From Octopus bimaculoides (taxonomy: Eukaryota): 54,271 nt of DNA. Numbering within the stretch: the stretch's first letter is position 1; every line of letters begins with the position of its first letter. The stretch is from assembly GCF_001194135.2 (NCBI RefSeq), contig NC_068982.1, forward strand, positions 165,880,921 to 165,935,191. The letters run 5' to 3'. The translations under genes were made by a program, and so were the position numbers. The notes beneath the pieces are model-generated. The model saw only the letters and a list, made by a program, of their open reading frames with translations, searched no databases and was not told the DNA's origin. Shown one piece after another: positions 13,707 to 54,250 of this stretch.

Positions 13707-15820
13707 TTTTATTGTAAAAAGAATTAATGTTTACTACGTTATTGAGTACGCTTTTTCCCGATAATAAACAATAAACAGATACATTCATGGACACATGTAC
13801 AAGCATTATGACACAGAAAATATACACAATTGCACACATCAATATTCAGTGAAATATACCACCTCACGCTCCATTAGTGGTTTTTGTGACACTTACACAA
13901 ACCCTTATATGTACACATGCACACTCACATACTTGCATGCATTGTGATTATAGCTCTTAAATAGTAAATTGTTAACCATACTATGATCTTAGCTAAAACG
14001 CTGAGAAGCGGCATTTTGACAGACATGAAATTGAAGATTTTAAATTGTTTTTGTACGAGCAAAATTACAGACCGTATTCCGAAATAGTCGATTACACTTT
14101 AGCTCAAAATACCATAGCCTCAGGATGACTGCATATGCACTTTTGCGTTTGTGTGTGTGTGTGTGTGTAAGGGTGTGCGTGCGTGTATGTATATGTGTGT
14201 GCATACATATGTTATATACATGTAGACATTATGTATATATATATATATTTGCTTACATGCACATGTATGTATATATATAATTGCTTACATATATGTATAT
14301 ATATTTGCTTACATGCACATGTACACTCGCTTATGTATGTATGTATGTACGTACGTACGTTAAATGTGTACGTACTTTCATACAGACACACACTCAAAAC
14401 ATTCACTCAAAAATATATTTGTGTTTTCACCCTCTTTTCTGGAGACATAAAAATGTTAATAGCTTTGAACATCAATAGTTAATTACAATTCATGAATTAT
14501 ATATCACACTTTCCACATATTCCGGAGGCGAAACTTCGCACCTAAATATATTCGTTGTGGGAATCTTAGCAATTAAAATTTCTCTTCTGCTCAATTCAGT
14601 ACCCAGCAAATGAGGACACATGATAGTACTTTGATTATGTTCTTTCTTATACTCTTTGCAGTCATTATATTTTTGTTTTGCTTTACTTCTTACGTTTTGT
14701 TTAGAATAATTCTAATAAATTTTATAGATTGCTATCATTTTGAGTTTAATTAATATTCACTAATGAAGTATTAATTGGTTATTTAAAAATCATAGTTTGA
14801 ATTTAAAACAAAAATTAGATTGATTTTCTTTGATAAATTTATTGCTTTGTTTCAGCTCTTTCTAATGGCAATATCAAAGCAAATTGTTACGGTTTCACCT
14901 TGAGGAAGATGAGAGCTTTATTTTAACTTCCATGGTTTTCCGTCACATAATTCGTTTATTGTTCCTAGAAGTTAAATACAAAACAAATTATATTTGAAAT
15001 TAGCAAACCATTTAAACTAACAATTGCACTGCTAAAAGAAACTTAATCGTTTGTGATAAAATTATTTTAGCCTTGATCTTCTGTCATAACTCCATTCTCT
15101 TCTAAGATGTTTTAGAGCAATAGTAAAACGATACAACTATTTTACTAATACTTTATTTTATCGCTTCAATCCACGCGAAGGATGGAAAGTATGCAGAACA
15201 TGAATTCAAAAGACAAAGGTTCGTAAGAAAATACATCAAGAATTTTAGTGTTTCATTGTTTCGTTTTAATGTCAAAGAGTACCGTCTTATTGTATCACAT
15301 AGATGTGCTTTCATACAGTCATTCTTATTTTCATAACTCTCATAATTTATTTTCATAACTCTCATTTTTATTGCTAGTCAACTAACATTATTTTAGATTA
15401 GAAGCACAGGATACGTTGAAAAATGCAGACCCTGATAAACGAAAGACAAAATGGTAAAGGCTGAACTTCGAATTATTATATACCTGCTCGAACTCGGTTG
15501 GCCAAGGGTTAAAAATGAACCAGTATTATAAGATTCGAATGAATATGGGAGTATCTACGAGGTCGTTCTGCTTGATTTTTTATTCATTACATGTTCTGTC
15601 TTAAAGAAATGCCACCATGGAAAATGTAGCCCTAGGTATACAAAAAGATCAAATGGTTAGAAACCGAATATATTTCATCACATGTCTAGTGAATCAGTGT
15701 TGATCTAGGGCTAAACAACAATAGTGTACTATTCGTTGACAACGAAAAGCAAAGGCAATCGAGTCGCCATTCACTATACACAAACTATGACCAATATTAA
15801 TCTATTTTTGTAAAGCTCTA

Positions 15821-17149: not shown

Positions 17150-18130
17150 CTTGCTACAGTTAGGGTATCATACATCTATAACAGAGAAATATGAAAACTT
17201 CCAGAGTTTGAAGCGCACTGAAAGTATGGTGTAGTTGGGAGCAGTTGCGAGTCTCCTGTCTTGTACATGGGTGAGTCCCATGCTGATGTGCTGAATATTG
17301 CACATTCGGCACAATGATTAGTTTGATTCCTACTTGGAATACATCGGCTCTGAGCATGTTCGTTCTCTTTCTGAGTGCAAAATTTAGAGCCATATGCAAT
17401 TCCTCATTTTGTCATACTCCAACTGATATTTTTGAAGAATTGTCATACTCCAACTGATATTTTTGAAGAATTGTCATACTCCAACTGATATGTCTGAAGA
17501 ATTGTCCATATCAAATATTATTATCTTTTCATCTGAACTATATTTATTTCTGTATCAGTTTTGCATCAATTTTTGCTTAATTATGCTTAATGTTAGTATT
17601 TCTGGTATGCAAAATTATGAACTGCCTTTGTATGCAGTATAATTGGTTTTGCGTTTCGTCTTTGTTATTTTGTATGGTTTTATATCTGTTTCAATGTAGC
17701 TAAAGATAATTGTTGAAATTGTGATAGGCCTCCTCATTTTTTATAAATATATGTATGTATTTATGTATGTATTATGTGCACCGAGGTTTTTGTGATGTAA
17801 TCTAAACTTCGTTACAATCTTGGTTGTATATTTGCATTTGGAATCACGAGTAGTTTCTAATTACAACCTTAGGTTACTTCTGAGATTGTCAGTGTGATGA
17901 TTGCCCTTTAATGTTATATTGCAATTCCTTAAATAATTTCTGTCCGATAATCTGTTTCGTTTTTGGCATCTCGTACAATATCTCTTTCAAATATACATAA
18001 GTACTTATATGCATCATTTATGCTTAGTTTCTTTATTTTCAGATTGATTTTCTTTACAAATATATACTTATTTGATTAGCCTTCCTGGGTGAAAAGTGGT
18101 TTTCTCGTGCTTGTTTTGGTTTTATGTTTT
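17150..18130 (-). mobile_element. Decayed R4/Dong-like non-LTR retrotransposon, C-terminal region
   Basis: Minus-strand remnants IKKLSINDAYKYLCIFE (cf. YKYLG), LHHK..GGL and CRMC..IQHI (CCHC-like); many stops. Confidence 0.5.
17409..17506. repeat. 31-bp tandem repeat, about 3.2 copies
   Basis: TTGTCATACTCCAACTGATATTTTTGAAGAA twice perfectly; the third copy has 2 substitutions. Confidence 0.97.
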
Positions 18131-19385
18131 AGAGCGAAAGGGAAAAACAGGATATTGTGATGCTTGTGCTCCTCACAAGGTTAAATGAGGCGTGAGGGGC
18201 AAGTGAAGTCAAGCGAGAATCGAATCGACTTCCCATAATATAACATTTATCTCAAGGTGCTCGTCACGTTGGTTTGCATATCTGAATTTTTTGGACGGTA
18301 AAAGCTAATAAGCAATTAATAGCTAAAAGCAAAATTCCAGAATTGTTCTTATAGTAAACGTAACATCATTTCTGATATACTATATTTCTTCCAAGAAAAA
18401 GACAAATGACGTATTGAAAGGAAATAATTGTGCAACATGATCACTATATTAAACTAAACGAAATGGCAATTTGAAACTCTATCCATATGTCAAGAGAGAT
18501 TGAATTGCTCTTTCGTTAAGTAAGAAATACAATACACTGACAAATTTTCAATCTGCAAATACGCAGTTATTTGATTATTTAGTGAATAATTATCGAGGAC
18601 GTATACTTCATTCAAACTTTAATATGAAATATTTGAGAAACAAAGCCGAAATAAATATGGTGAGGATTATATTTTCAACTTTAAATAAATCATGATATCA
18701 ATAAGAGAGAAATTATTTAACCTTATGTTAAGTATAGAATATGTTTACAGTTAGTCGATCTAACACATACACATACACACATAAACACACACATGGTAAA
18801 AATGTGCTTCCTTATACATGATTATGGGTTCAGTGGCACCTTGTTGTATTGTAGCCTCGAGTCTACCGAAACCTTGTGCATGGAATTAGTAGACTACCAA
18901 ACCAACATATATATTTTATGACTTTATCCTCACTCAAAGTGTGATATGCAAGACGTCTTTATATGTCTTCTATAGCAGACACTTTGACCGTGACTATGAA
19001 CTAGTATTGTGTAAGTTCAAATTTCGGACTCGTAATAAAATAGTGCAGAACCACCAAAGCATACTGTTACTGATAATTTAGATCAATCAGATATATTAGA
19101 ACATGTACAAAACTAGTTCAATGTTATCAGTTTTCATTGAACTTGTAGGAATCTCAAGAAACACGTATGATTTAGGTGCCATCATCATCTCGAGATTCGA
19201 AGGAAAGACATAGAGACTGGTTTGATAGCAATAACAATAAAATACACCAGTTGATGGAGTCAAAGCAATCAATTTACAGGGCTTTTTTGGATCCCAATAC
19301 AAAGAATAATATTTCTTTAGAGCGCTCCTACAACTCGTAGAAAGGAACATGGCCATAAATTTCATCGGATATCTTGACAGAAAGT

Positions 19386-19505
19386 TTCCCAAGGAGGCGG
19401 CCGTTTACGAATCGTTCGGAATTTATTTTGCGCGATTCTTGCGACGAATGCACGGTGCCAAGTGGGCCACTTTTGGTAAGCAGAACTGGTGATGTGGGAT
19501 GAACC
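19386..19505 (+). pseudogene. 28S (LSU) rRNA fragment
   Basis: 19446-19505 GAATGC..GTGCCAAGTGGGCCACTTTTGGTAAGCAGAACTGGTGATGTGGGATGAACC matches the conserved eukaryotic LSU core as I recall it. The upstream GC-rich part has a GAATCG/CGATTC stem, consistent with an expansion segment; the left boundary is approximate. Confidence 0.85.
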
Positions 19506-19531
19506 CTAACCCTAACCCTAACCCTAACCCT
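19502..19531 (-). repeat. Interstitial telomeric repeat (TTAGGG)5
   Basis: Five perfect AACCCT units on the + strand. Confidence 0.95.
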
Positions 19532-22500
19532 TAGAAAAATATTTGCAATTAAAAGATGTAGAAACAGTCTTAAAAGACCCAGCTGATTCATCACAATGTA
19601 AAGAACACTTTTTGTACTTTTTAATAATTCTGAGTTAATATGGAAATAATTAATGAATTTCCAAAAACAAACATGTGGACACGCATGAACGACATACCCG
19701 AGTATGTGAAGTTATTTTAGGCCTTGATGGAATACCCAGAGAATCCTTGAAGGCAGAGGACAACACTGTAACATCTACAGAACATTAGATGATAGTTGCT
19801 TACTGGGAAGGAACTCCAATTTCATAGGATTGTATTAATGATGTACACGTGTTCATACATAAAACTAACATGATTTTCTCATCTTCGTGACTTCAGTAGA
19901 AGTGTGATGAACACCAGATACGACTCTGTCAAATATTTGTTGACCTCACTAAAGCCTTTGATATGATCATCAAAGAATCTTTATGGAGAGTCCTTCACAA
20001 ACTTGGCTGTCTATCAAAATTTGTACGCATGTTTAAAGAACTGAACCGCAATTTGAAAGCAAGGATTGCATTTAATAGAGAGATTTCAGATGAAATTGTC
20101 ATAGGCAATGGAATAAAACAAGGTGACATTCCAGTACCTCATTGTTTTCAATATATTTCCCTACACTGATATCTTATGTCTCGCAAAACTCAGAAGTACT
20201 AAAATAGGATTCTGTACTTCGGATAGACTTTCAATTTACGTTAAAGATTTTTATGGTTCTCATTAGAGAGTTATGGTATACAGATGATGTTGGCTATGTA
20301 GAACATGCACAAGAAGAGATACAGATCATAACGGACAGATTTTTCTGTTGCATGTGATGTCTTTTGTCTAACTCTAAGTTTAAAATTACCTCGCCGGCAC
20401 CTAGTGAACATTATGTGGAGCCTACTATCTATGTGGAAACATATTAAGAGTGGTAGATATATTTCCATATTTTGAAATTCTAGTATACTGAGAATCGAAA
20501 AGGCAAGTATGGTTTTTGGTAAACATGAGAAAAGTCTGTGGTCAGAGGCATTACAGCTCGCATTAAAATCAATATTTACAAGAAATGCATACTGACAGCA
20601 TTCTTGCATGCTTCTGAGACATGGAATCCTCATAGTAGGCATGTAAAAATGAGAGATTCCACAGAAAATGCACCAAAAAAATATTAAAGGTAAAATGGGA
20701 GGATTTGCTGTTAGATACGGAAATACTAGATGGCTGGTTGTGTATCCATTTAGTCATATTTGTACAGAATCAAATGTGATTGAGAGGGTATCGTGTCGGT
20801 ACATCAGATGGAAACTGTCCAAGCAGTTATTTTATGGGGAGTTTCAATCTCGAAAACGACCACAACATAAGGCAAAGCAACTGTACAATAAATGCCTTTG
20901 TGACGACTGAGCTAAGAAATATTTGAATAAGGAGTGATAGAATTTTGGTGATGTAGGACTGTAAAAGAATATATATTTGACTGTAAAAGAAATATATTTG
21001 ACTGTGTTTCAGTTTGCGGAAAATCGTGGAAAAAAAGGAAGTTAAATATTACAGTATCAGAAAAAAATGAGATATACACATGTTGAAAATTTACGAAGTG
21101 CAAAACATCATATAATGATTAAAATGAATTTTAAAACTGTAAATATGTTATAACTATAGCTAAAATATTTTCTATATTGAAAAGCAAGAAAAATATAAAA
21201 TAAAATTTGCATATCACAAGAAATTTTCAACCTGCATTAATTCGAGTTATAACATTTTTTATAACAAAATAATAATATGAAGCGAAATATCTCGCACTTT
21301 AAAATATAAATACNNNNNNNNNNNNNNNNNNNNNNNNNNNNNNNNNNNNNNNNNNNNNNNNNNNNNNNNNNNNNNNNNNNNNNNNNNNNNNNNNNNNNNN
21401 NNNNNNNNNNNNNNNNNNNNNNNNNNNNNNNNNNNNNNNNNNNNNNNNNNNNNNNNNNNNNNNNNNNNNNNNNNNNNNNNNNNNNNNNNNNNNNNNNNNN
21501 NNNNNNNNNNNNNNNNNNNNNNNNNNNNNNNNNNNNNNNNNNNNNNNNNNNNNNNNNNNNNNNNNNNNNNNNNNNNNNNNNNNNNNNNNNNNNNNNNNNN
21601 NNNNNNNNNNNNNNNNNNNNNNNNNNNNNNNNNNNNNNNNNNNNNNNNNNNNNNNNNNNNNNNNNNNNNNNNNNNNNNNNNNNNNNNNNNNNNNNNNNNN
21701 NNNNNNNNNNNNNNNNNNNNNNNNNNNNNNNNNNNNNNNNNNNNNNNNNNNNNNNNNNNNNNNNNNNNNNNNNNNNNNNNNNNNNNNNNNNNNNNNATAT
21801 ATATATATATATATATATATAATGTTTGTATGTATATAATGTTTGTATGTATATGTATGTATGACTTTAAATGTAGAATATAATTTTTACATGTATATGC
21901 ACAATTAAACACACACACACATCTATACACGAGTTTATATAAATTAGCTATGTATTTATGTGTGTATGTATGCAAGTTATCAGAGGTACTCGGCGTGCCC
22001 AGATGTCGAGTGTGTAGAAATATTAATTCTTAAACTTAAATGACTTATAGCAAATTCTTATGCAATGCTTTTAGTATGTAATTATATTTACATATTTTTT
22101 ATCGTAATGCAGATACACGCTTAAGTTGAATTTTCCCAGGTTTCTATGGTGTTTGAAACTGTTTGAGAATGTATTTATTCATAGCTTAATGTTATGATAT
22201 AAGAAATTTCGAAATTTATATTTTACTTTATACCTATTCTTGTAATTCTAAATTGATAGGAAACGCATATTTTTGCAATTTTAACAGAAATGTATCCTAG
22301 AGTTCTGGAGTGAACAATATTTATTTTTATCTGCGACCAAAGACAAGTCGGTTTAGGGGGCATACAATTCTAGATGTTAACTGTTACTATTATTTGCCTA
22401 ATGAATTTCTCCACTGAGAGTTACATCTGCAATTCCTACCGAAGCTATACGAAATGTTCATCATCTTTATCAACCGTGGAGAGAACATTATTTTCAATGG

Positions 22501-23120: not shown

Positions 23121-23391
23121 NNNNNNNNNNNNNNNNNNNNNNNNNNNNNNNNNNNNNNNNNNNNNNNNNNNNNNNNNNNNNNNNNNNNNNNNNNNNNNNN
23201 NNNNNNNNNNNNNNNNNNNNNNNNNNNNNNNNNNNNNNNNNNNNNNNNNNNNNNNNNNNNNNNNNNNNNNNNNNNNNNNNNNNNNNNNNNNNNNNNNNNN
23301 NNNNNNNNNNNNNNNNNNNNNNNNNNNNNNNNNNNNNNNNNNNNNNNNNNNNNNNNNNNNNNNNNNNNNNNNNNNNNNNNNNNNNNNNNNN

Positions 23392-39566: not shown

Positions 39567-40351
39567 NNNNNNNNNNNNNNNNNNNNNNNNNNNNNNNNNN
39601 NNNNNNNNNNNNNNNNNNNNNNNNNNNNNNNNNNNNNNNNNNNNNNNNNNNNNNNNNNNNNNNNNNNNNNNNNNNNNNNNNNNNNNNNNNNNNNNNNNNN
39701 NNNNNNNNNNNNNNNNNNNNNNNNNNNNNNNNNNNNNNNNNNNNNNNNNNNNNNNNNNNNNNNNNNNNNNNNNNNNNNNNNNNNNNNNNNNNNNNNNNNN
39801 NNNNNNNNNNNNNNNNNNNNNNNNNNNNNNNNNNNNNNNNNNNNNNNNNNNNNNNNNNNNNNNNNNNNNNNNNNNNNNNNNNNNNNNNNNNNNNNNNNNN
39901 NNNNNNNNNNNNNNNNNNNNNNNNNNNNNNNNNNNNNNNNNNNNNNNNNNNNNNNNNNNNNNNNNNNNNNNNNNNNNNNNNNNNNNNNNNNNNNNNNNNN
40001 NNNNNNNNNNNNNNNNNNNNNNNNNNNNNNNNNNNNNNNNNNNNNNNNNNNNNNNNNNNNNNNNNNNNNNNNNNNNNNNNNNNNNNNNNNNNNNNNNNNN
40101 NNNNNNNNNNNNNNNNNNNNNNNNNNNNNNNNNNNNNNNNNNNNNNNNNNNNNNNNNNNNNNNNNNNNNNNNNNNNNNNNNNNNNNNNNNNNNNNNNNNN
40201 NNNNNNNNNNNNNNNNNNNNNNNNNNNNNNNNNNNNNNNNNNNNNNNNNNNNNNNNNNNNNNNNNNNNNNNNNNNNNNNNNNNNNNNNNNNNNNNNNNNN
40301 NNNNNNNNNNNNNNNNNNNNNNNNNNNNNNNNNNNNNNNNNNNNNNNNNNN

Positions 40352-52496: not shown

Positions 52497-54250
52497 CATC
52501 GCTTTTGTCTGTAGTTGGAAACGTACTTGCCCTCATACTCTTAGAACGTTTAAGTACCTTCATAGTTCCAAATATAATGTCTGAGTCTCAATGTGGTTTT
52601 CGCTCCTCCAGGGGCACAGTTGATTGCATCTTTAGTATCATACAATTTCAGGAAAAGTGCATTGAACAGAATCTTGCCCTATACTATTGCTTTGTTGATT
52701 TAAGCAAGGCATTCGATACTGTTAATCGAAATCCTTAGGAAAATAGGTTACACAGACAAATTTGTGAAGATGATCGGGGATTTGCATCAAAATATGAAGG
52801 CTAGAGTTAATTTTGGTGGTAGGCTCACTGAATGTTTTGCCGTGGAAATGGAGTAAATCAAGGAGATCTTGATGCACCACCCTCTTTGCAATATACTTTG
52901 CTGTTGTGCTGCACTCGATTTTTCAAAACTTTGAGGAGGGTATTTACATAAAATATCGAACAACAGAGAATATTTTTTATCTGACCAGACTGAAATTCAA
53001 AACAAAGGTTTTTACTTCACTCAGTAGGGAACTCTTATACGCTGACGATTGCGATCTAGTCAGTCACTCTGAAACGAGCCTGCAATCTCTTGTATCTGCA
53101 TTTTACACAGCTTGTGATGATTTTGGTTTGACCATCAGCTTGGAAGAAAACAGTTGTAATGGTTCAACCTGCACGTGGTACTGTTTGCAACCCCACTAAA
53201 ATTTTTAAGGATAAGTTACTTGAGGTTGTGACTTTCATTTACCTTGGAAGCTCTGTAGAAAATGATGGAAATTTGGACACAAATTCCAAGGGCAGCACAA
53301 GCATTTGGTGCTTCAGAGTCACGCGTTTGGCGCCTACGACATGTAAATAATAACATAAAATTGGCACTTTACAAATCGTTTGTCTTACCATCCCTGTTGT
53401 ATTCTTCTGAAAAATGGACGTGTTATGAAAGACATTTCAAACTGTTACAACGATTTCACCAAAAGTGCCTTCGCCGCATTAAATAGGGCTTTTTTTTACT
53501 CCAGGCACAGATGTCTTTGCGTCTGCAGGCATCACTTCAATTAAATCAATGACTCTTAAAATCAAATGAGATTGACTGGCCATAGTGTTCGAATGGCGGA
53601 TGAACGCACTCCCAAATAGCTGTTTTATGACGCGCTTGCAGAGTGAAAAATCAATCAGTATAAACCTAAAAAGAGGTTTAAGGACGGCATAAGGTGTACC
53701 ACGAAGTCACTTGGGATGGATCCAAAGGCCATAGAAACCTTTGCTTCGGATCGAGCTGGATGGCGAACAAAAGTGTGGAGTTGAGTGAAAGCCTTTGAGG
53801 AGGGCAGAATAACACATGCAAGAGAGATTTAAAGAATAGTGTTGTGATTTAGGTGAATCTCAGTGACTTTTTTGTGTGCAAAGTTTGTAACAGATCATGA
53901 GTTTCTTTTTCATTTGAAGACCCATGAAAAACAAACCTCTACCAACTAATCTATCTATATATATCTGAGCACACCTTTCAATACTGTGTATGCCATAAGG
54001 TCCAAAATTTTAATGGAGGCCTCAAAAGACATTTTAAGATACACAAAAAACAGAACTTAACTGCAGCTCCCGGTGGTCCAAATCGATTTTGCACTCTGTG
54101 GGTGTCTTTTCAATACATTGTCTAGTTTAAAAAAGCTACATAAGACGCCAGGATGAATCTGAGGTGTAGGTACAAGAAATAGTCAGAATCTGCATAAGGA
54201 GTAGGTAACCACCATGTATGTATGTATGTATGTATATATGTATGTATGTA
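52497..54250 (+). mobile_element. 5'-truncated RTE-clade LINE: RT, C-terminal zinc fingers, 3' UTR and (ATGT)n tail
   Basis: SLLSVVG..ESQCGFRSSRGTVDCIF..FVDLSKAFDTV, GV.QG, ELLYADD, F.YLGS, LLYSSEKW and RFHQKCLRRI; disrupted by stops and frameshifts. Confidence 0.95.

What the first reader, a model, noticed from the sequence alone, without database searches (positions are those of the whole stretch)
19386..19531. 28S rRNA fragment fused to (TTAGGG)5 and inserted inside an RTE LINE
Seen: a conserved LSU rRNA segment ends at GGGATGAACC and runs straight into AACCCT x5, sharing AACC. RTE coding remnants lie on both sides (GYLDRK before; KDVETVLKD..KEHF after). On the minus strand, TTAGGG repeats ending in GGTT continue as antisense rRNA. 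Established: TTAGGG is the molluscan telomere repeat; short interstitial telomeric tracts can mark repaired breaks; G-rich 3' ends can prime reverse transcription, as with endonuclease-deficient PLEs and L1 at telomeres. Inference: repeats were added at a break, their 3' end annealed to rRNA through 4 nt and primed cDNA synthesis, and about 20 RTE codons appear to have been lost at the site.
Basis: partly seen in the sequence, partly recalled or inferred. Interest (0 to 1): 0.8.

Follow-up and report, generated by a model that had tools for sequence, protein, structure and literature searches.

The report
rRNA-plus-telomere-repeat scar inside a LINE
A 141-base patch, made of a piece of large-subunit ribosomal RNA joined through four shared bases to five telomere repeats, replaces about 80-90 bases of a dead LINE retrotransposon; it is most likely the scar of a chromosome break mended by reverse transcription, a known kind of event seen here with an unusual RNA.

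Summary
Window 19391-19505 (+) is a sense fragment of eukaryotic 28S rRNA. It runs without a gap into five perfect AACCCT units (19502-19531), and AACC (19502-19505) is shared by both. The patch sits inside one decayed APE+RT LINE copy that is collinear on both sides. About 26-30 LINE codons are missing at the site and there is no target-site duplication. On the minus strand the order is (AGGGTT)5 followed by antisense rRNA. That is the order expected if a G-rich telomeric 3' end was extended by reverse transcription of rRNA, and the opposite of a healed rDNA end. The closest known case is the vertebrate TERC-ITS: telomeric repeats plus a retrotranscribed telomerase-RNA piece inserted at double-strand breaks. 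Here the RNA is 28S. I could not reach the host genome, reads or orthologous loci. Copy number, one-step origin and RNA versus DNA source therefore remain untested. The 'RTE' label was not tested. This is a new variant of a known kind: a single-locus molecular fossil of moderate interest.

The parts
18893..19390 (+). Left flank: decayed non-LTR LINE (end of the endonuclease domain and the linker before the RT), ending in ...IGYLDRKFP
   Evidence: tblastn places P0001 aa53-88 at 19200-19307 (E 9e-5), with further homologs. There is a weak endonuclease-tail match at 18893-19051 (E 0.045). In the MAFFT alignment IGYLDRKFP aligns to WWxxKAxE of the homologs.
19391..19505 (+). Sense fragment of 28S (LSU) rRNA, about 115 nt: an expansion-segment hairpin plus the conserved core ending in GGGATGAACC
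   Evidence: Rfam LSU_rRNA_eukarya model positions 1125-1170, E 1.5e-7. 62 of 62 nt are identical to the 28S of L006 and L007, and there is a 12-nt match GGAGGCGGCCGT at 19393-19404. GC is 0.51 and CpG o/e 1.41, against 0.35 and 0.5-0.69 in the flanks.
19502..19505 (.). AACC shared by the rRNA fragment and the first telomeric unit (4-nt junction microhomology)
   Evidence: Read directly from the sequence. All real 28S sequences diverge from the window immediately after AACC. P(microhomology of 4 nt or more) = 0.016.
19502..19531 (-). Five perfect telomeric hexamers: (AACCCT)5 on the + strand, (AGGGTT)5 with the G-rich strand on the - strand
   Evidence: TRF: period 6, 5.0 copies, 100% match. 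It is the only such tract in the window; 0 of 100 shuffles reach the count.
19532..20907 (+). Right flank: the same LINE copy continuing (..KDVETVLKD..CKEHF.., GLDGIP, the RT domain FVDLTKAFD.., and the C-terminal part), with stops and frameshifts
   Evidence: tblastn places P0001 aa227-274 at 19720-19863 and aa330-696 at 19867-20886 (E 9e-31). P0003 and P0013 blocks lie in several frames with in-frame stops. Homologs carry RVT_1 and Exo_endo_phos.
19863..19867 (+). Second internal deletion of the LINE (about 55 codons) with no filler. It is not part of the patch but shows that this copy has other deletions.
   Evidence: P0001 aa274 and aa330 map 3 nt apart.

Best explanation
This is a one-off repair scar. 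A double-strand break occurred inside an old, dead LINE copy and about 80-90 bp were lost.

On the minus strand, the 3' end at the right-hand side of the break (window 19532) acquired five TTAGGG-type repeats ending in ...GGGTT-3', most simply added by telomerase. That G-rich 3' end then annealed by its last four bases (GGTT) to AACC in a 28S rRNA molecule. A reverse transcriptase (telomerase itself or, more plausibly, a LINE RT) copied about 111 further nucleotides of rRNA. [quoted passage not shown]

Shown: the anatomy, the polarity, the 4-nt overlap, the loss of LINE sequence, the absence of a target-site duplication, and the undecayed state of the patch.

Inferred: that the repeats were made at the break, that the rRNA piece came from RNA and not rDNA, which enzymes acted, and that all of it happened in one step.
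For: (1) rRNA identity and exact junction.
(2) Five perfect repeats, unique in the window.
(3) Polarity: sense rRNA followed by the C-strand, i.e. G-strand followed by antisense rRNA. This cannot arise by healing a broken rDNA end, which would give rDNA followed by TTAGGG. It is what extension of a G-rich 3' end gives (reading, plus established telomere polarity).
(4) 4-nt microhomology, P = 0.016 for a random junction.
(5) The same LINE copy is collinear on both sides, with about 26-30 codons missing exactly at the patch.
(6) No target-site duplication and no poly(A).
(7) The patch has GC 0.51, CpG o/e 1.41 and no difference from real 28S over 62 nt, whereas the LINE has stops, frameshifts and CpG o/e 0.5-0.69.
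(8) Precedent: short interstitial telomeric tracts inserted at breaks, half of them with deletions (PMC2246262, Table 1). [quoted passage not shown]
(9) 28S fragments are known substrates of LINE reverse transcriptases (18 28S/LINE-1 chimeras; bioRxiv 10.1101/2025.02.02.635956).
(10) TTAGGG is the only experimentally determined cephalopod telomere motif (PMC13218726, citing Adachi 2014), if the host is a cephalopod.
Against: - No empty orthologous site, so a one-step origin is not shown.
- Copy number in the host genome is unknown.
- The fragment is internal to mature 28S, so nothing distinguishes an RNA source from an rDNA source.
- The junction between the right flank and the repeats shows at most 1 nt in register with the repeat (TCTA|AGGGTT), so there is no positive signature of telomerase seeding.
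- The age contrast between patch and LINE is qualitative. The LINE's divergence from its own consensus could not be measured, and a short tandem array can stay perfect through slippage.
- The host species, its telomere motif and its own 28S are not known from the data.
- The assembly is a gapped short-read draft (13 N runs).
Confidence: 0.5

Rival explanations
1. DNA-level filler. The break was repaired by microhomology-mediated or non-homologous end joining that captured two DNA pieces: an rDNA fragment (for example from extrachromosomal rDNA) and a telomeric DNA fragment. Alternatively it copied about 141 bp from a pre-existing telomere-to-rDNA fusion elsewhere in the genome (templated insertion). 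No reverse transcription is involved.
For: The 4-nt overlap, the loss of flanking sequence and the lack of a target-site duplication are equally typical of MMEJ or NHEJ with filler DNA. The fragment contains nothing (intron, spacer, poly(A)) that marks it as RNA-derived. rDNA and telomeric DNA are both abundant and both form extrachromosomal circles (established knowledge; t-circles are discussed in PMC8537989).
Against: It needs two unrelated DNA fragments at one break. The authors of PMC8537989 judged the analogous t-circle scenario unlikely for that reason. The observed polarity (G-strand 5' of antisense rRNA) is required by the priming model but has only a 1-in-2 chance here. No second locus is known.
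Confidence: 0.2
2. Part of a repeated unit. The 28S piece with its (AACCCT)n tail belongs to a multi-copy element: an rRNA-derived SINE-like retroposon with a telomere-like tail, or a LINE subfamily whose master copy already carried the patch. On this reading the locus is one copy among many.
For: rRNA-derived SINEs exist (28S- and 5S-derived SINEs are cited in bioRxiv 10.1101/2025.02.02.635956). Retroelements with telomere-repeat 3' ends exist (endonuclease-deficient Penelope-like elements; PMC8557442).
Against: There is no target-site duplication, and target sequence is lost at the site, which is not what endonuclease-driven SINE insertion gives. The fragment is an internal 28S piece with no pol III promoter or LINE-derived tail. 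There is no second copy in the 54 kb window. The generalised junction pattern had no hit in two large collections, but those collections hold few animal genomes.
Confidence: 0.12
3. Made during the LINE's own retrotransposition. The LINE reverse transcriptase copying LINE RNA jumped to a C-rich telomeric RNA, then to 28S rRNA through AACC, then back to the LINE RNA about 85 nt further upstream. The patch would then be as old as the LINE copy, and no chromosomal break in an existing copy is needed.
For: LINE reverse transcriptases switch templates and form chimeras with 28S rRNA, mostly in the same orientation as the LINE, as here (bioRxiv 10.1101/2025.02.02.635956). The rRNA is in sense orientation relative to the LINE. 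The DWF-to-DGIP interval is 526 bp here against a median of 172 aa (516 bp) in homologs, so the length is roughly preserved.
Against: It needs three successive switches and a C-rich telomeric RNA template. Known chimeras put the foreign RNA at the 5' end of a truncated LINE, not in its middle. The patch looks younger than the LINE. The length match is explained by other small deletions in the interval.
Confidence: 0.08
4. Assembly or library artefact. A chimeric read or a misjoin of high-copy rDNA and telomeric reads was placed into this contig.
For: The window is a gapped short-read draft with 13 N runs. Both components are high-copy sequences.
Against: The patch is flanked on both sides by the same single-copy LINE remnant, in the same strand and order. 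The nearest gap is 1.8 kb away, at 21314. A 4-nt overlap cannot cause a k-mer misjoin.
Confidence: 0.05

Closest known systems
TERC-ITS loci of vertebrates (Nergadze et al. 2007, PMC2246262; Sola et al. 2021, PMC8537989)
   Same: A short tract of telomeric hexamers directly abuts a fragment copied from a cellular non-coding RNA, inserted at an internal site together with deletion of flanking sequence. In the same-orientation subclass (4 of 41 loci) the model is repeat addition to the break's 3' end followed by continued reverse transcription. That is exactly the architecture here.
   Different: The RNA piece here is 28S rRNA, not telomerase RNA, so a switch to a second RNA molecule is required (here through 4 nt). 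A one-step origin is not demonstrated because no empty orthologous site is available.
Short interstitial telomeric sequences inserted at double-strand breaks (PMC2246262; PMC7215372)
   Same: A few perfect hexamers at an unrelated internal locus, often inside repeats, with deletion of flanking sequence in about half of the loci and added 'random' sequence in about 17%.
   Different: The added sequence here is identifiable (28S) and is joined in register through AACC. The microhomology between the break end and the repeats is 1 nt at most.
Endonuclease-independent LINE-1 insertion at breaks and at dysfunctional telomeres (Morrish et al. 2002, 2007; from my own knowledge, also cited in PMC2246262)
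   Same: A free DNA 3' end, including a telomeric G-rich end, primes reverse transcription of an RNA after annealing over a few bases. The products lack target-site duplications and are accompanied by target deletions.
   Different: The RNA copied is rRNA and not a LINE or poly(A) RNA. The primer is a 30-nt internal telomeric tract and not a chromosome end.
28S rRNA/LINE-1 chimeras and rRNA retropseudogenes (bioRxiv 10.1101/2025.02.02.635956)
   Same: Internal 28S fragments of 50-482 nt are reverse transcribed and fixed in the genome next to LINE sequence, mostly in the same orientation as the LINE.
   Different: In those cases the 28S piece sits at the 5' end of a newly inserted LINE, with target-site duplications. 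Here it interrupts an old LINE, is linked to telomeric repeats and has no target-site duplication.
Endonuclease-deficient Penelope-like elements at telomeres (Athena, Coprina; Gladyshev and Arkhipova 2007, from my own knowledge; PMC8557442)
   Same: The polarity is the same: sense RNA sequence followed by C-strand repeats, produced when a G-rich overhang anneals to a short complementary stretch and primes cDNA synthesis.
   Different: Those are self-encoded retroelements that carry the complementary repeats at their 3' ends and live at chromosome ends. Here a cellular rRNA with a chance AACC was used once at an internal site.

Membership tests
Short interstitial telomeric sequence inserted at a double-strand break | Short tract of exact telomeric hexamers at an internal, non-telomeric locus | tested here: met
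   AACCCT x5.0 at 100% identity, 19502-19531. It is the only such tract in 54 kb, and 0 of 100 shuffles reach the count.
Short interstitial telomeric sequence inserted at a double-strand break | Flank modification typical of end joining (deletion and/or added sequence), judged for insertions within repeats from the repeat consensus | tested here: met
   About 26-30 LINE codons are missing at the site relative to 23 homologs, and 111 nt of non-telomeric sequence are added.
Short interstitial telomeric sequence inserted at a double-strand break | Sudden appearance: an orthologous locus in a related species is empty | not testable with these tools
Short interstitial telomeric sequence inserted at a double-strand break | [quoted passage not shown] | tested here: inconclusive
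   On the minus strand...TTTCTA is followed by AGGGTT. At most 1 nt is in register, and the original LINE sequence at the break is unknown.
TERC-ITS | The fragment next to the repeats derives from telomerase RNA | tested here: not met
   The fragment is LSU rRNA (Rfam RF02543, E 1.5e-7; 62 of 62 nt identical to real 28S).
Endonuclease-independent retro-insertion at a break | No target-site duplication, no endonuclease-type target, and target deletion | tested here: met
   The best shared word between the flanks is AGAAA, which does not abut the left junction. The deletion is shown.
Endonuclease-independent retro-insertion at a break | Microhomology between the priming 3' end and the RNA | tested here: met
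   AACC is shared at 19502-19505; P = 0.016 for 4 nt or more.
Endonuclease-independent retro-insertion at a break | The inserted sequence derives from RNA and not from DNA | not testable with these tools
   The fragment lies inside mature 28S and has no processing mark.
   Homolog P0003 has Exo_endo_phos and RVT_1. Window remnants are collinear with it.
   No classified LINE library was available. Homolog P0001 ends in C2H2-type zinc fingers (zf-met), which I do not associate with RTE (from memory only).
rRNA-derived SINE or other repeated unit | Many dispersed copies with the same internal junction | not testable with these tools
   There is no second copy in the window. The junction pattern had 0 hits in metagenome and prokaryote collections, which hold few animal genomes.
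rRNA-derived SINE or other repeated unit | Target-site duplication with an intact target | tested here: not met
   There is no target-site duplication and about 80-90 bp of target are lost.

The most novel reading that the evidence does not exclude
This would be an 'rRNA-ITS': fossil evidence, outside vertebrates, that a telomeric 3' end made at an internal chromosome break can leave the telomerase template, anneal by only four bases to an abundant cellular RNA (28S rRNA), and be extended by reverse transcription to bridge the break. That would extend the TERC-ITS pathway from telomerase RNA to arbitrary RNAs, and from vertebrates to molluscs. It also predicts a genome-wide class of (TTAGGG)n-antisense-RNA patches.
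Probability: 0.4. Interest if true: 0.55.

Novelty: new variant of a known kind. Interest (0 to 1): 0.4.

Why it matters
If the reading holds, the locus records RNA-templated break repair started from telomeric repeats in an invertebrate, using an RNA other than telomerase RNA. That bears on two open questions. One is whether telomerase or LINE reverse transcriptases patch germline breaks with whatever RNA is at hand. The other is how short interstitial telomeric tracts and their unexplained 'random' additions arise. It also suggests a simple genome-wide search: telomeric hexamers followed by the antisense of abundant RNAs. By itself it is one neutral scar in a dead transposon with no expected function.

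Tried and rejected
1. Same locus or junction in other assemblies. The exact look-up of the 88-aa minus-strand ORF spanning both junctions (19328-19594) found nothing on record.

2. Homology search with the junction ORF against 5.8 billion proteins gave no hit at E of 10 or less. This is weak evidence, because short matches cannot reach significance in so large a database.

3. The generalised junction pattern GGTAAGCAGAACTGG-N(0-30)-CCCTAACCCTAACCC had 0 hits in metagenome contigs and genome contigs.

4. Host 28S. A 28-nt pattern from the expansion segment had 0 hits in genome contigs and viral contigs. Only foreign 28S sequences were obtained, so the lineage-specific hairpin tip remains unmatched.

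5. RNA folding of the fragment gave z = 0.47, no thermodynamic signal, and says nothing either way.

6. A whole-window Rfam scan at E of 0.1 or less gave only microsatellite-driven miRNA chance matches and a sub-threshold U2-like match. No other rRNA piece was found. No tRNAs were found.

7. I first read GGTGATGTGGG as two CpG-to-TpG decay events. I rejected this because L006 and L007 carry it natively.

8. A healed rDNA end or a natural rDNA-telomere boundary is rejected on polarity: healing gives rDNA followed by TTAGGG, not CCCTAA.

9. A literature search found no report of an rRNA fragment abutting interstitial telomeric repeats in the held library.

Full report
**1. What is there**

Window 19340-19600 reads, on the + strand: LINE-derived sequence ...ATCGGATATCTTGACAGAAAGTTTCCC; then AAGGAGGCGGCCGTTTACGAATCG...GCGACGAATGCACGGTGCCAAGTGGGCCACTTTTGGTAAGCAGAACTGGTGATGTGGGATGAACC; then CTAACCCTAACCCTAACCCTAACCCT; then TAGAAAAATATTTGCAATTAAAAGATGTAGAAACAGTC..., which is LINE sequence again.

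Rfam's eukaryotic LSU rRNA model matches 19461-19506 (+) at model positions 1125-1170 with 37.8 bits and E=1.5e-7. The whole-window scan at gathering threshold is empty only because the piece is short.

Tandem Repeats Finder reports AACCCT x5.0 at 100% identity, 19502-19531. The 12-mer AACCCTAACCCT occurs nowhere else in the window, and none of 100 shuffles reaches the observed count.

**2. Is the left part really 28S, and has it decayed?**

A 36-nt core pattern retrieved five 28S-bearing metagenome contigs. All are identical to the window from GGTGCC to GGGATGAACC and then continue AAACG or ATACG, where the window continues CTAACCC.

A protein search with the six reading frames of the fragment found two antisense-28S ORFs. 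Their contigs, L006 and L007, are identical to the window over 62 nt (19444-19505), including GGTGATGTGGG. I had first taken GGTGATGTGGG for two CpG-to-TpG changes; it is a native 28S variant.

L006 also has GGAGGCGGCCGT (window 19393-19404) just upstream of TTGCGACGAATGC. In the window the two blocks are separated by a longer hairpin tip. The rRNA-derived part therefore starts at about 19391-19393 and is about 115 nt long.

The lineage-specific tip could not be matched to anything, and folding energy is uninformative (z = 0.47). The host's own 28S was not obtainable, so 'matches the host 28S' remains untested.

**3. The surroundings**

The patch lies in a single decayed non-LTR retrotransposon on the + strand. 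A stitched translation found one homolog, P0001. An exhaustive phmmer search with P0001 found 117,352 relatives.

tblastn places P0001 aa53-88 at 19200-19307, aa227-274 at 19720-19863 and aa330-696 at 19867-20886. Closer homologs behave the same way, in several frames and with in-frame stops. Homolog P0003 has Exo_endo_phos and RVT_1. A weak endonuclease-tail match reaches back to 18893.

The element is an APE-type LINE.

In a MAFFT alignment of 23 homologs from the DWF motif to the DGIP motif:
- the left flank IGYLDRKFP aligns with WWxxKAxE;
- the right flank KDVETVLKD..CKEHF aligns with KDGTTLIxD..RWQEHY;
- the stretch between them (VQEAANRKDSKAMYSLMKEIYGPKPSNIT in P0001) is absent.

About 26-30 codons (80-90 bp) are therefore lost, and 141 bp (19391-19531) are gained.

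There is no target-site duplication. The best word shared by the two flanks is AGAAA, which does not abut the left junction. The same LINE copy has another clean deletion of about 55 codons at 19863/19867 without filler.

No other copy of this LINE or of the patch occurs in the window. A second LINE at 52499-53946 is a different, 5'-truncated element that does not cover the relevant region.

**4. What the anatomy implies**

- Polarity. The sense rRNA strand is followed by the C-rich telomeric strand. Equivalently, on the minus strand, 5'-(AGGGTT)5 is followed by antisense rRNA. Healing of a broken rDNA unit by telomerase would give rDNA followed by (TTAGGG)n, and natural chromosome ends have the same polarity. 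The observed order is what results when something is added to the 3' end of a G-rich strand.
- Junction. AACC is shared. The bases on either side differ between the rRNA (G before, A or G after) and the repeat (T before, C after), so the overlap is exactly 4 nt. The probability of 4 nt or more at a random junction is 0.016. An annealing step was therefore involved.
- Target. Sequence was lost and there is no target-site duplication. This was a break repaired by end joining, not an endonuclease-driven insertion.
- Relative age. The patch has GC 0.51, CpG o/e 1.41, five perfect repeats and no difference from real 28S over 62 nt. The LINE flanks have GC 0.35, CpG o/e 0.5-0.69, in-frame stops, at least six frame changes and three or more internal deletions. 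This suggests the patch is younger than the LINE copy. The contrast is qualitative because the LINE's divergence from its own consensus is unknown.

**5. Best explanation (confidence about 0.5)**

A break in the dead LINE was resected. The minus-strand 3' end at 19532 received five telomeric repeats ending in GGGTT-3'. This end annealed to AACC of a 28S rRNA and primed synthesis of about 111 nt of cDNA. The cDNA end was then joined to the other break end.

The published precedent is the family of interstitial telomeric sequences inserted at breaks. Half of them come with deletions and about 17% with added sequence (PMC2246262, Table 1). The TERC-ITS loci are the closest subset: 41 loci in 22 vertebrates. 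For those where the repeats and the RNA-derived piece share orientation, the authors propose that telomerase adds repeats to the break's 3' end and that 'telomerase or another reverse transcriptase' then continues on the RNA (PMC8537989, section 3.2).

Here the RNA is not telomerase RNA, so a switch to a second RNA molecule is needed; the 4-nt overlap is its trace. LINE reverse transcriptases do copy 28S fragments: 18 28S/LINE-1 chimeras with a median length of 269 nt are reported in bioRxiv 10.1101/2025.02.02.635956. From my own knowledge, they can also extend telomeric 3' ends (Morrish et al. 2007), and endonuclease-deficient Penelope-like elements use G-overhang priming (Gladyshev and Arkhipova 2007; see also PMC8557442). 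TTAGGG is the only experimentally determined cephalopod telomere motif (PMC13218726), if the host is indeed a cephalopod, which I could not verify.

**6. Rivals**

- DNA filler capture, or copying from a telomere-rDNA fusion locus (0.2). It fits the overlap, the deletion and the missing target-site duplication equally well. It needs two DNA fragments at one break, and the polarity is then a coin toss.
- A repeated unit (0.12). This is untestable here. The lack of a target-site duplication and the target deletion argue against SINE-type insertion.
- Triple template switching during the LINE's own retrotransposition (0.08). It fits the sense orientation, but it needs three jumps and a C-rich telomeric RNA, and it conflicts with the apparent age difference.
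- Assembly artefact (0.05). The draft has 13 gaps, but the nearest is 1.8 kb away, and the same unique LINE flanks the patch on both sides in register.

**7. Limits**

The junction ORF look-up, the protein searches and the DNA pattern scans cannot stand in for a search of the host genome. The collections hold few animal genomes, and short peptide matches cannot reach significance in a database of 5.8 billion proteins. No literature report of an rRNA piece abutting an interstitial telomeric tract was found in the held library. That is absence of evidence only.

**8. Verdict**

This is a new variant of a known kind (an interstitial telomeric tract with a retrotranscribed RNA piece, here 28S instead of TERC), of moderate interest.

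Noticed in passing
window 19863-19867: The same LINE copy has a clean internal deletion of about 55 codons (P0001 aa274 to aa330 map 3 nt apart) with no filler, between ..VHVFIHK and NMIFSS...
   Followed up: partly
window 52499-53946 (+): A second LINE remnant from the same large superfamily but a different family. It is 5'-truncated (starts at P0001 aa289), up to 58% identical to P0001 in the RT, has stops and frameshifts, and shows no DNA similarity to the LINE at 19-21 kb.
   Followed up: partly
window 13877-14012 (-): A sub-threshold match to U2 spliceosomal RNA (29.9 bits against a gathering score of 46, E 0.034). It may be a decayed U2 pseudogene or a chance match.
   Followed up: no
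window, 13 N runs (e.g. 9448-10387, 21314-21796, 23121-23391, 39567-40351): Where I looked, the assembly gaps sit next to microsatellites (TG, TA, GA, TC runs), which is typical of a short-read draft. The many Rfam 'miRNA' matches at E of 0.1 or less are artefacts of these microsatellites.
   Followed up: no
window 17409-17506: A 31-bp unit repeated 3.2 times at 97% identity (TTGTCATACTCCAACTGATATTTTTGAAGAA), about 1.4 kb upstream of the LINE remnant. Its origin is unknown.
   Followed up: no
L006 and L007 (ENA metagenome contigs), region around the 28S core: Two GC-rich, divergent eukaryotic 28S sequences share 62 nt of exact identity with the window's fragment, including the semi-conserved GCGACGAATGCACGGTGCC and the GGTGATGTGGG variant. 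The source organisms are unknown.
   Followed up: partly
window 19212-19737: The interval from the DWF motif to the DGIP motif is 526 bp in the window, against a median of 172 aa (516 bp) in 23 homologs. The 141-bp patch almost exactly offsets the summed deletions in the interval. This is probably coincidence.
   Followed up: partly
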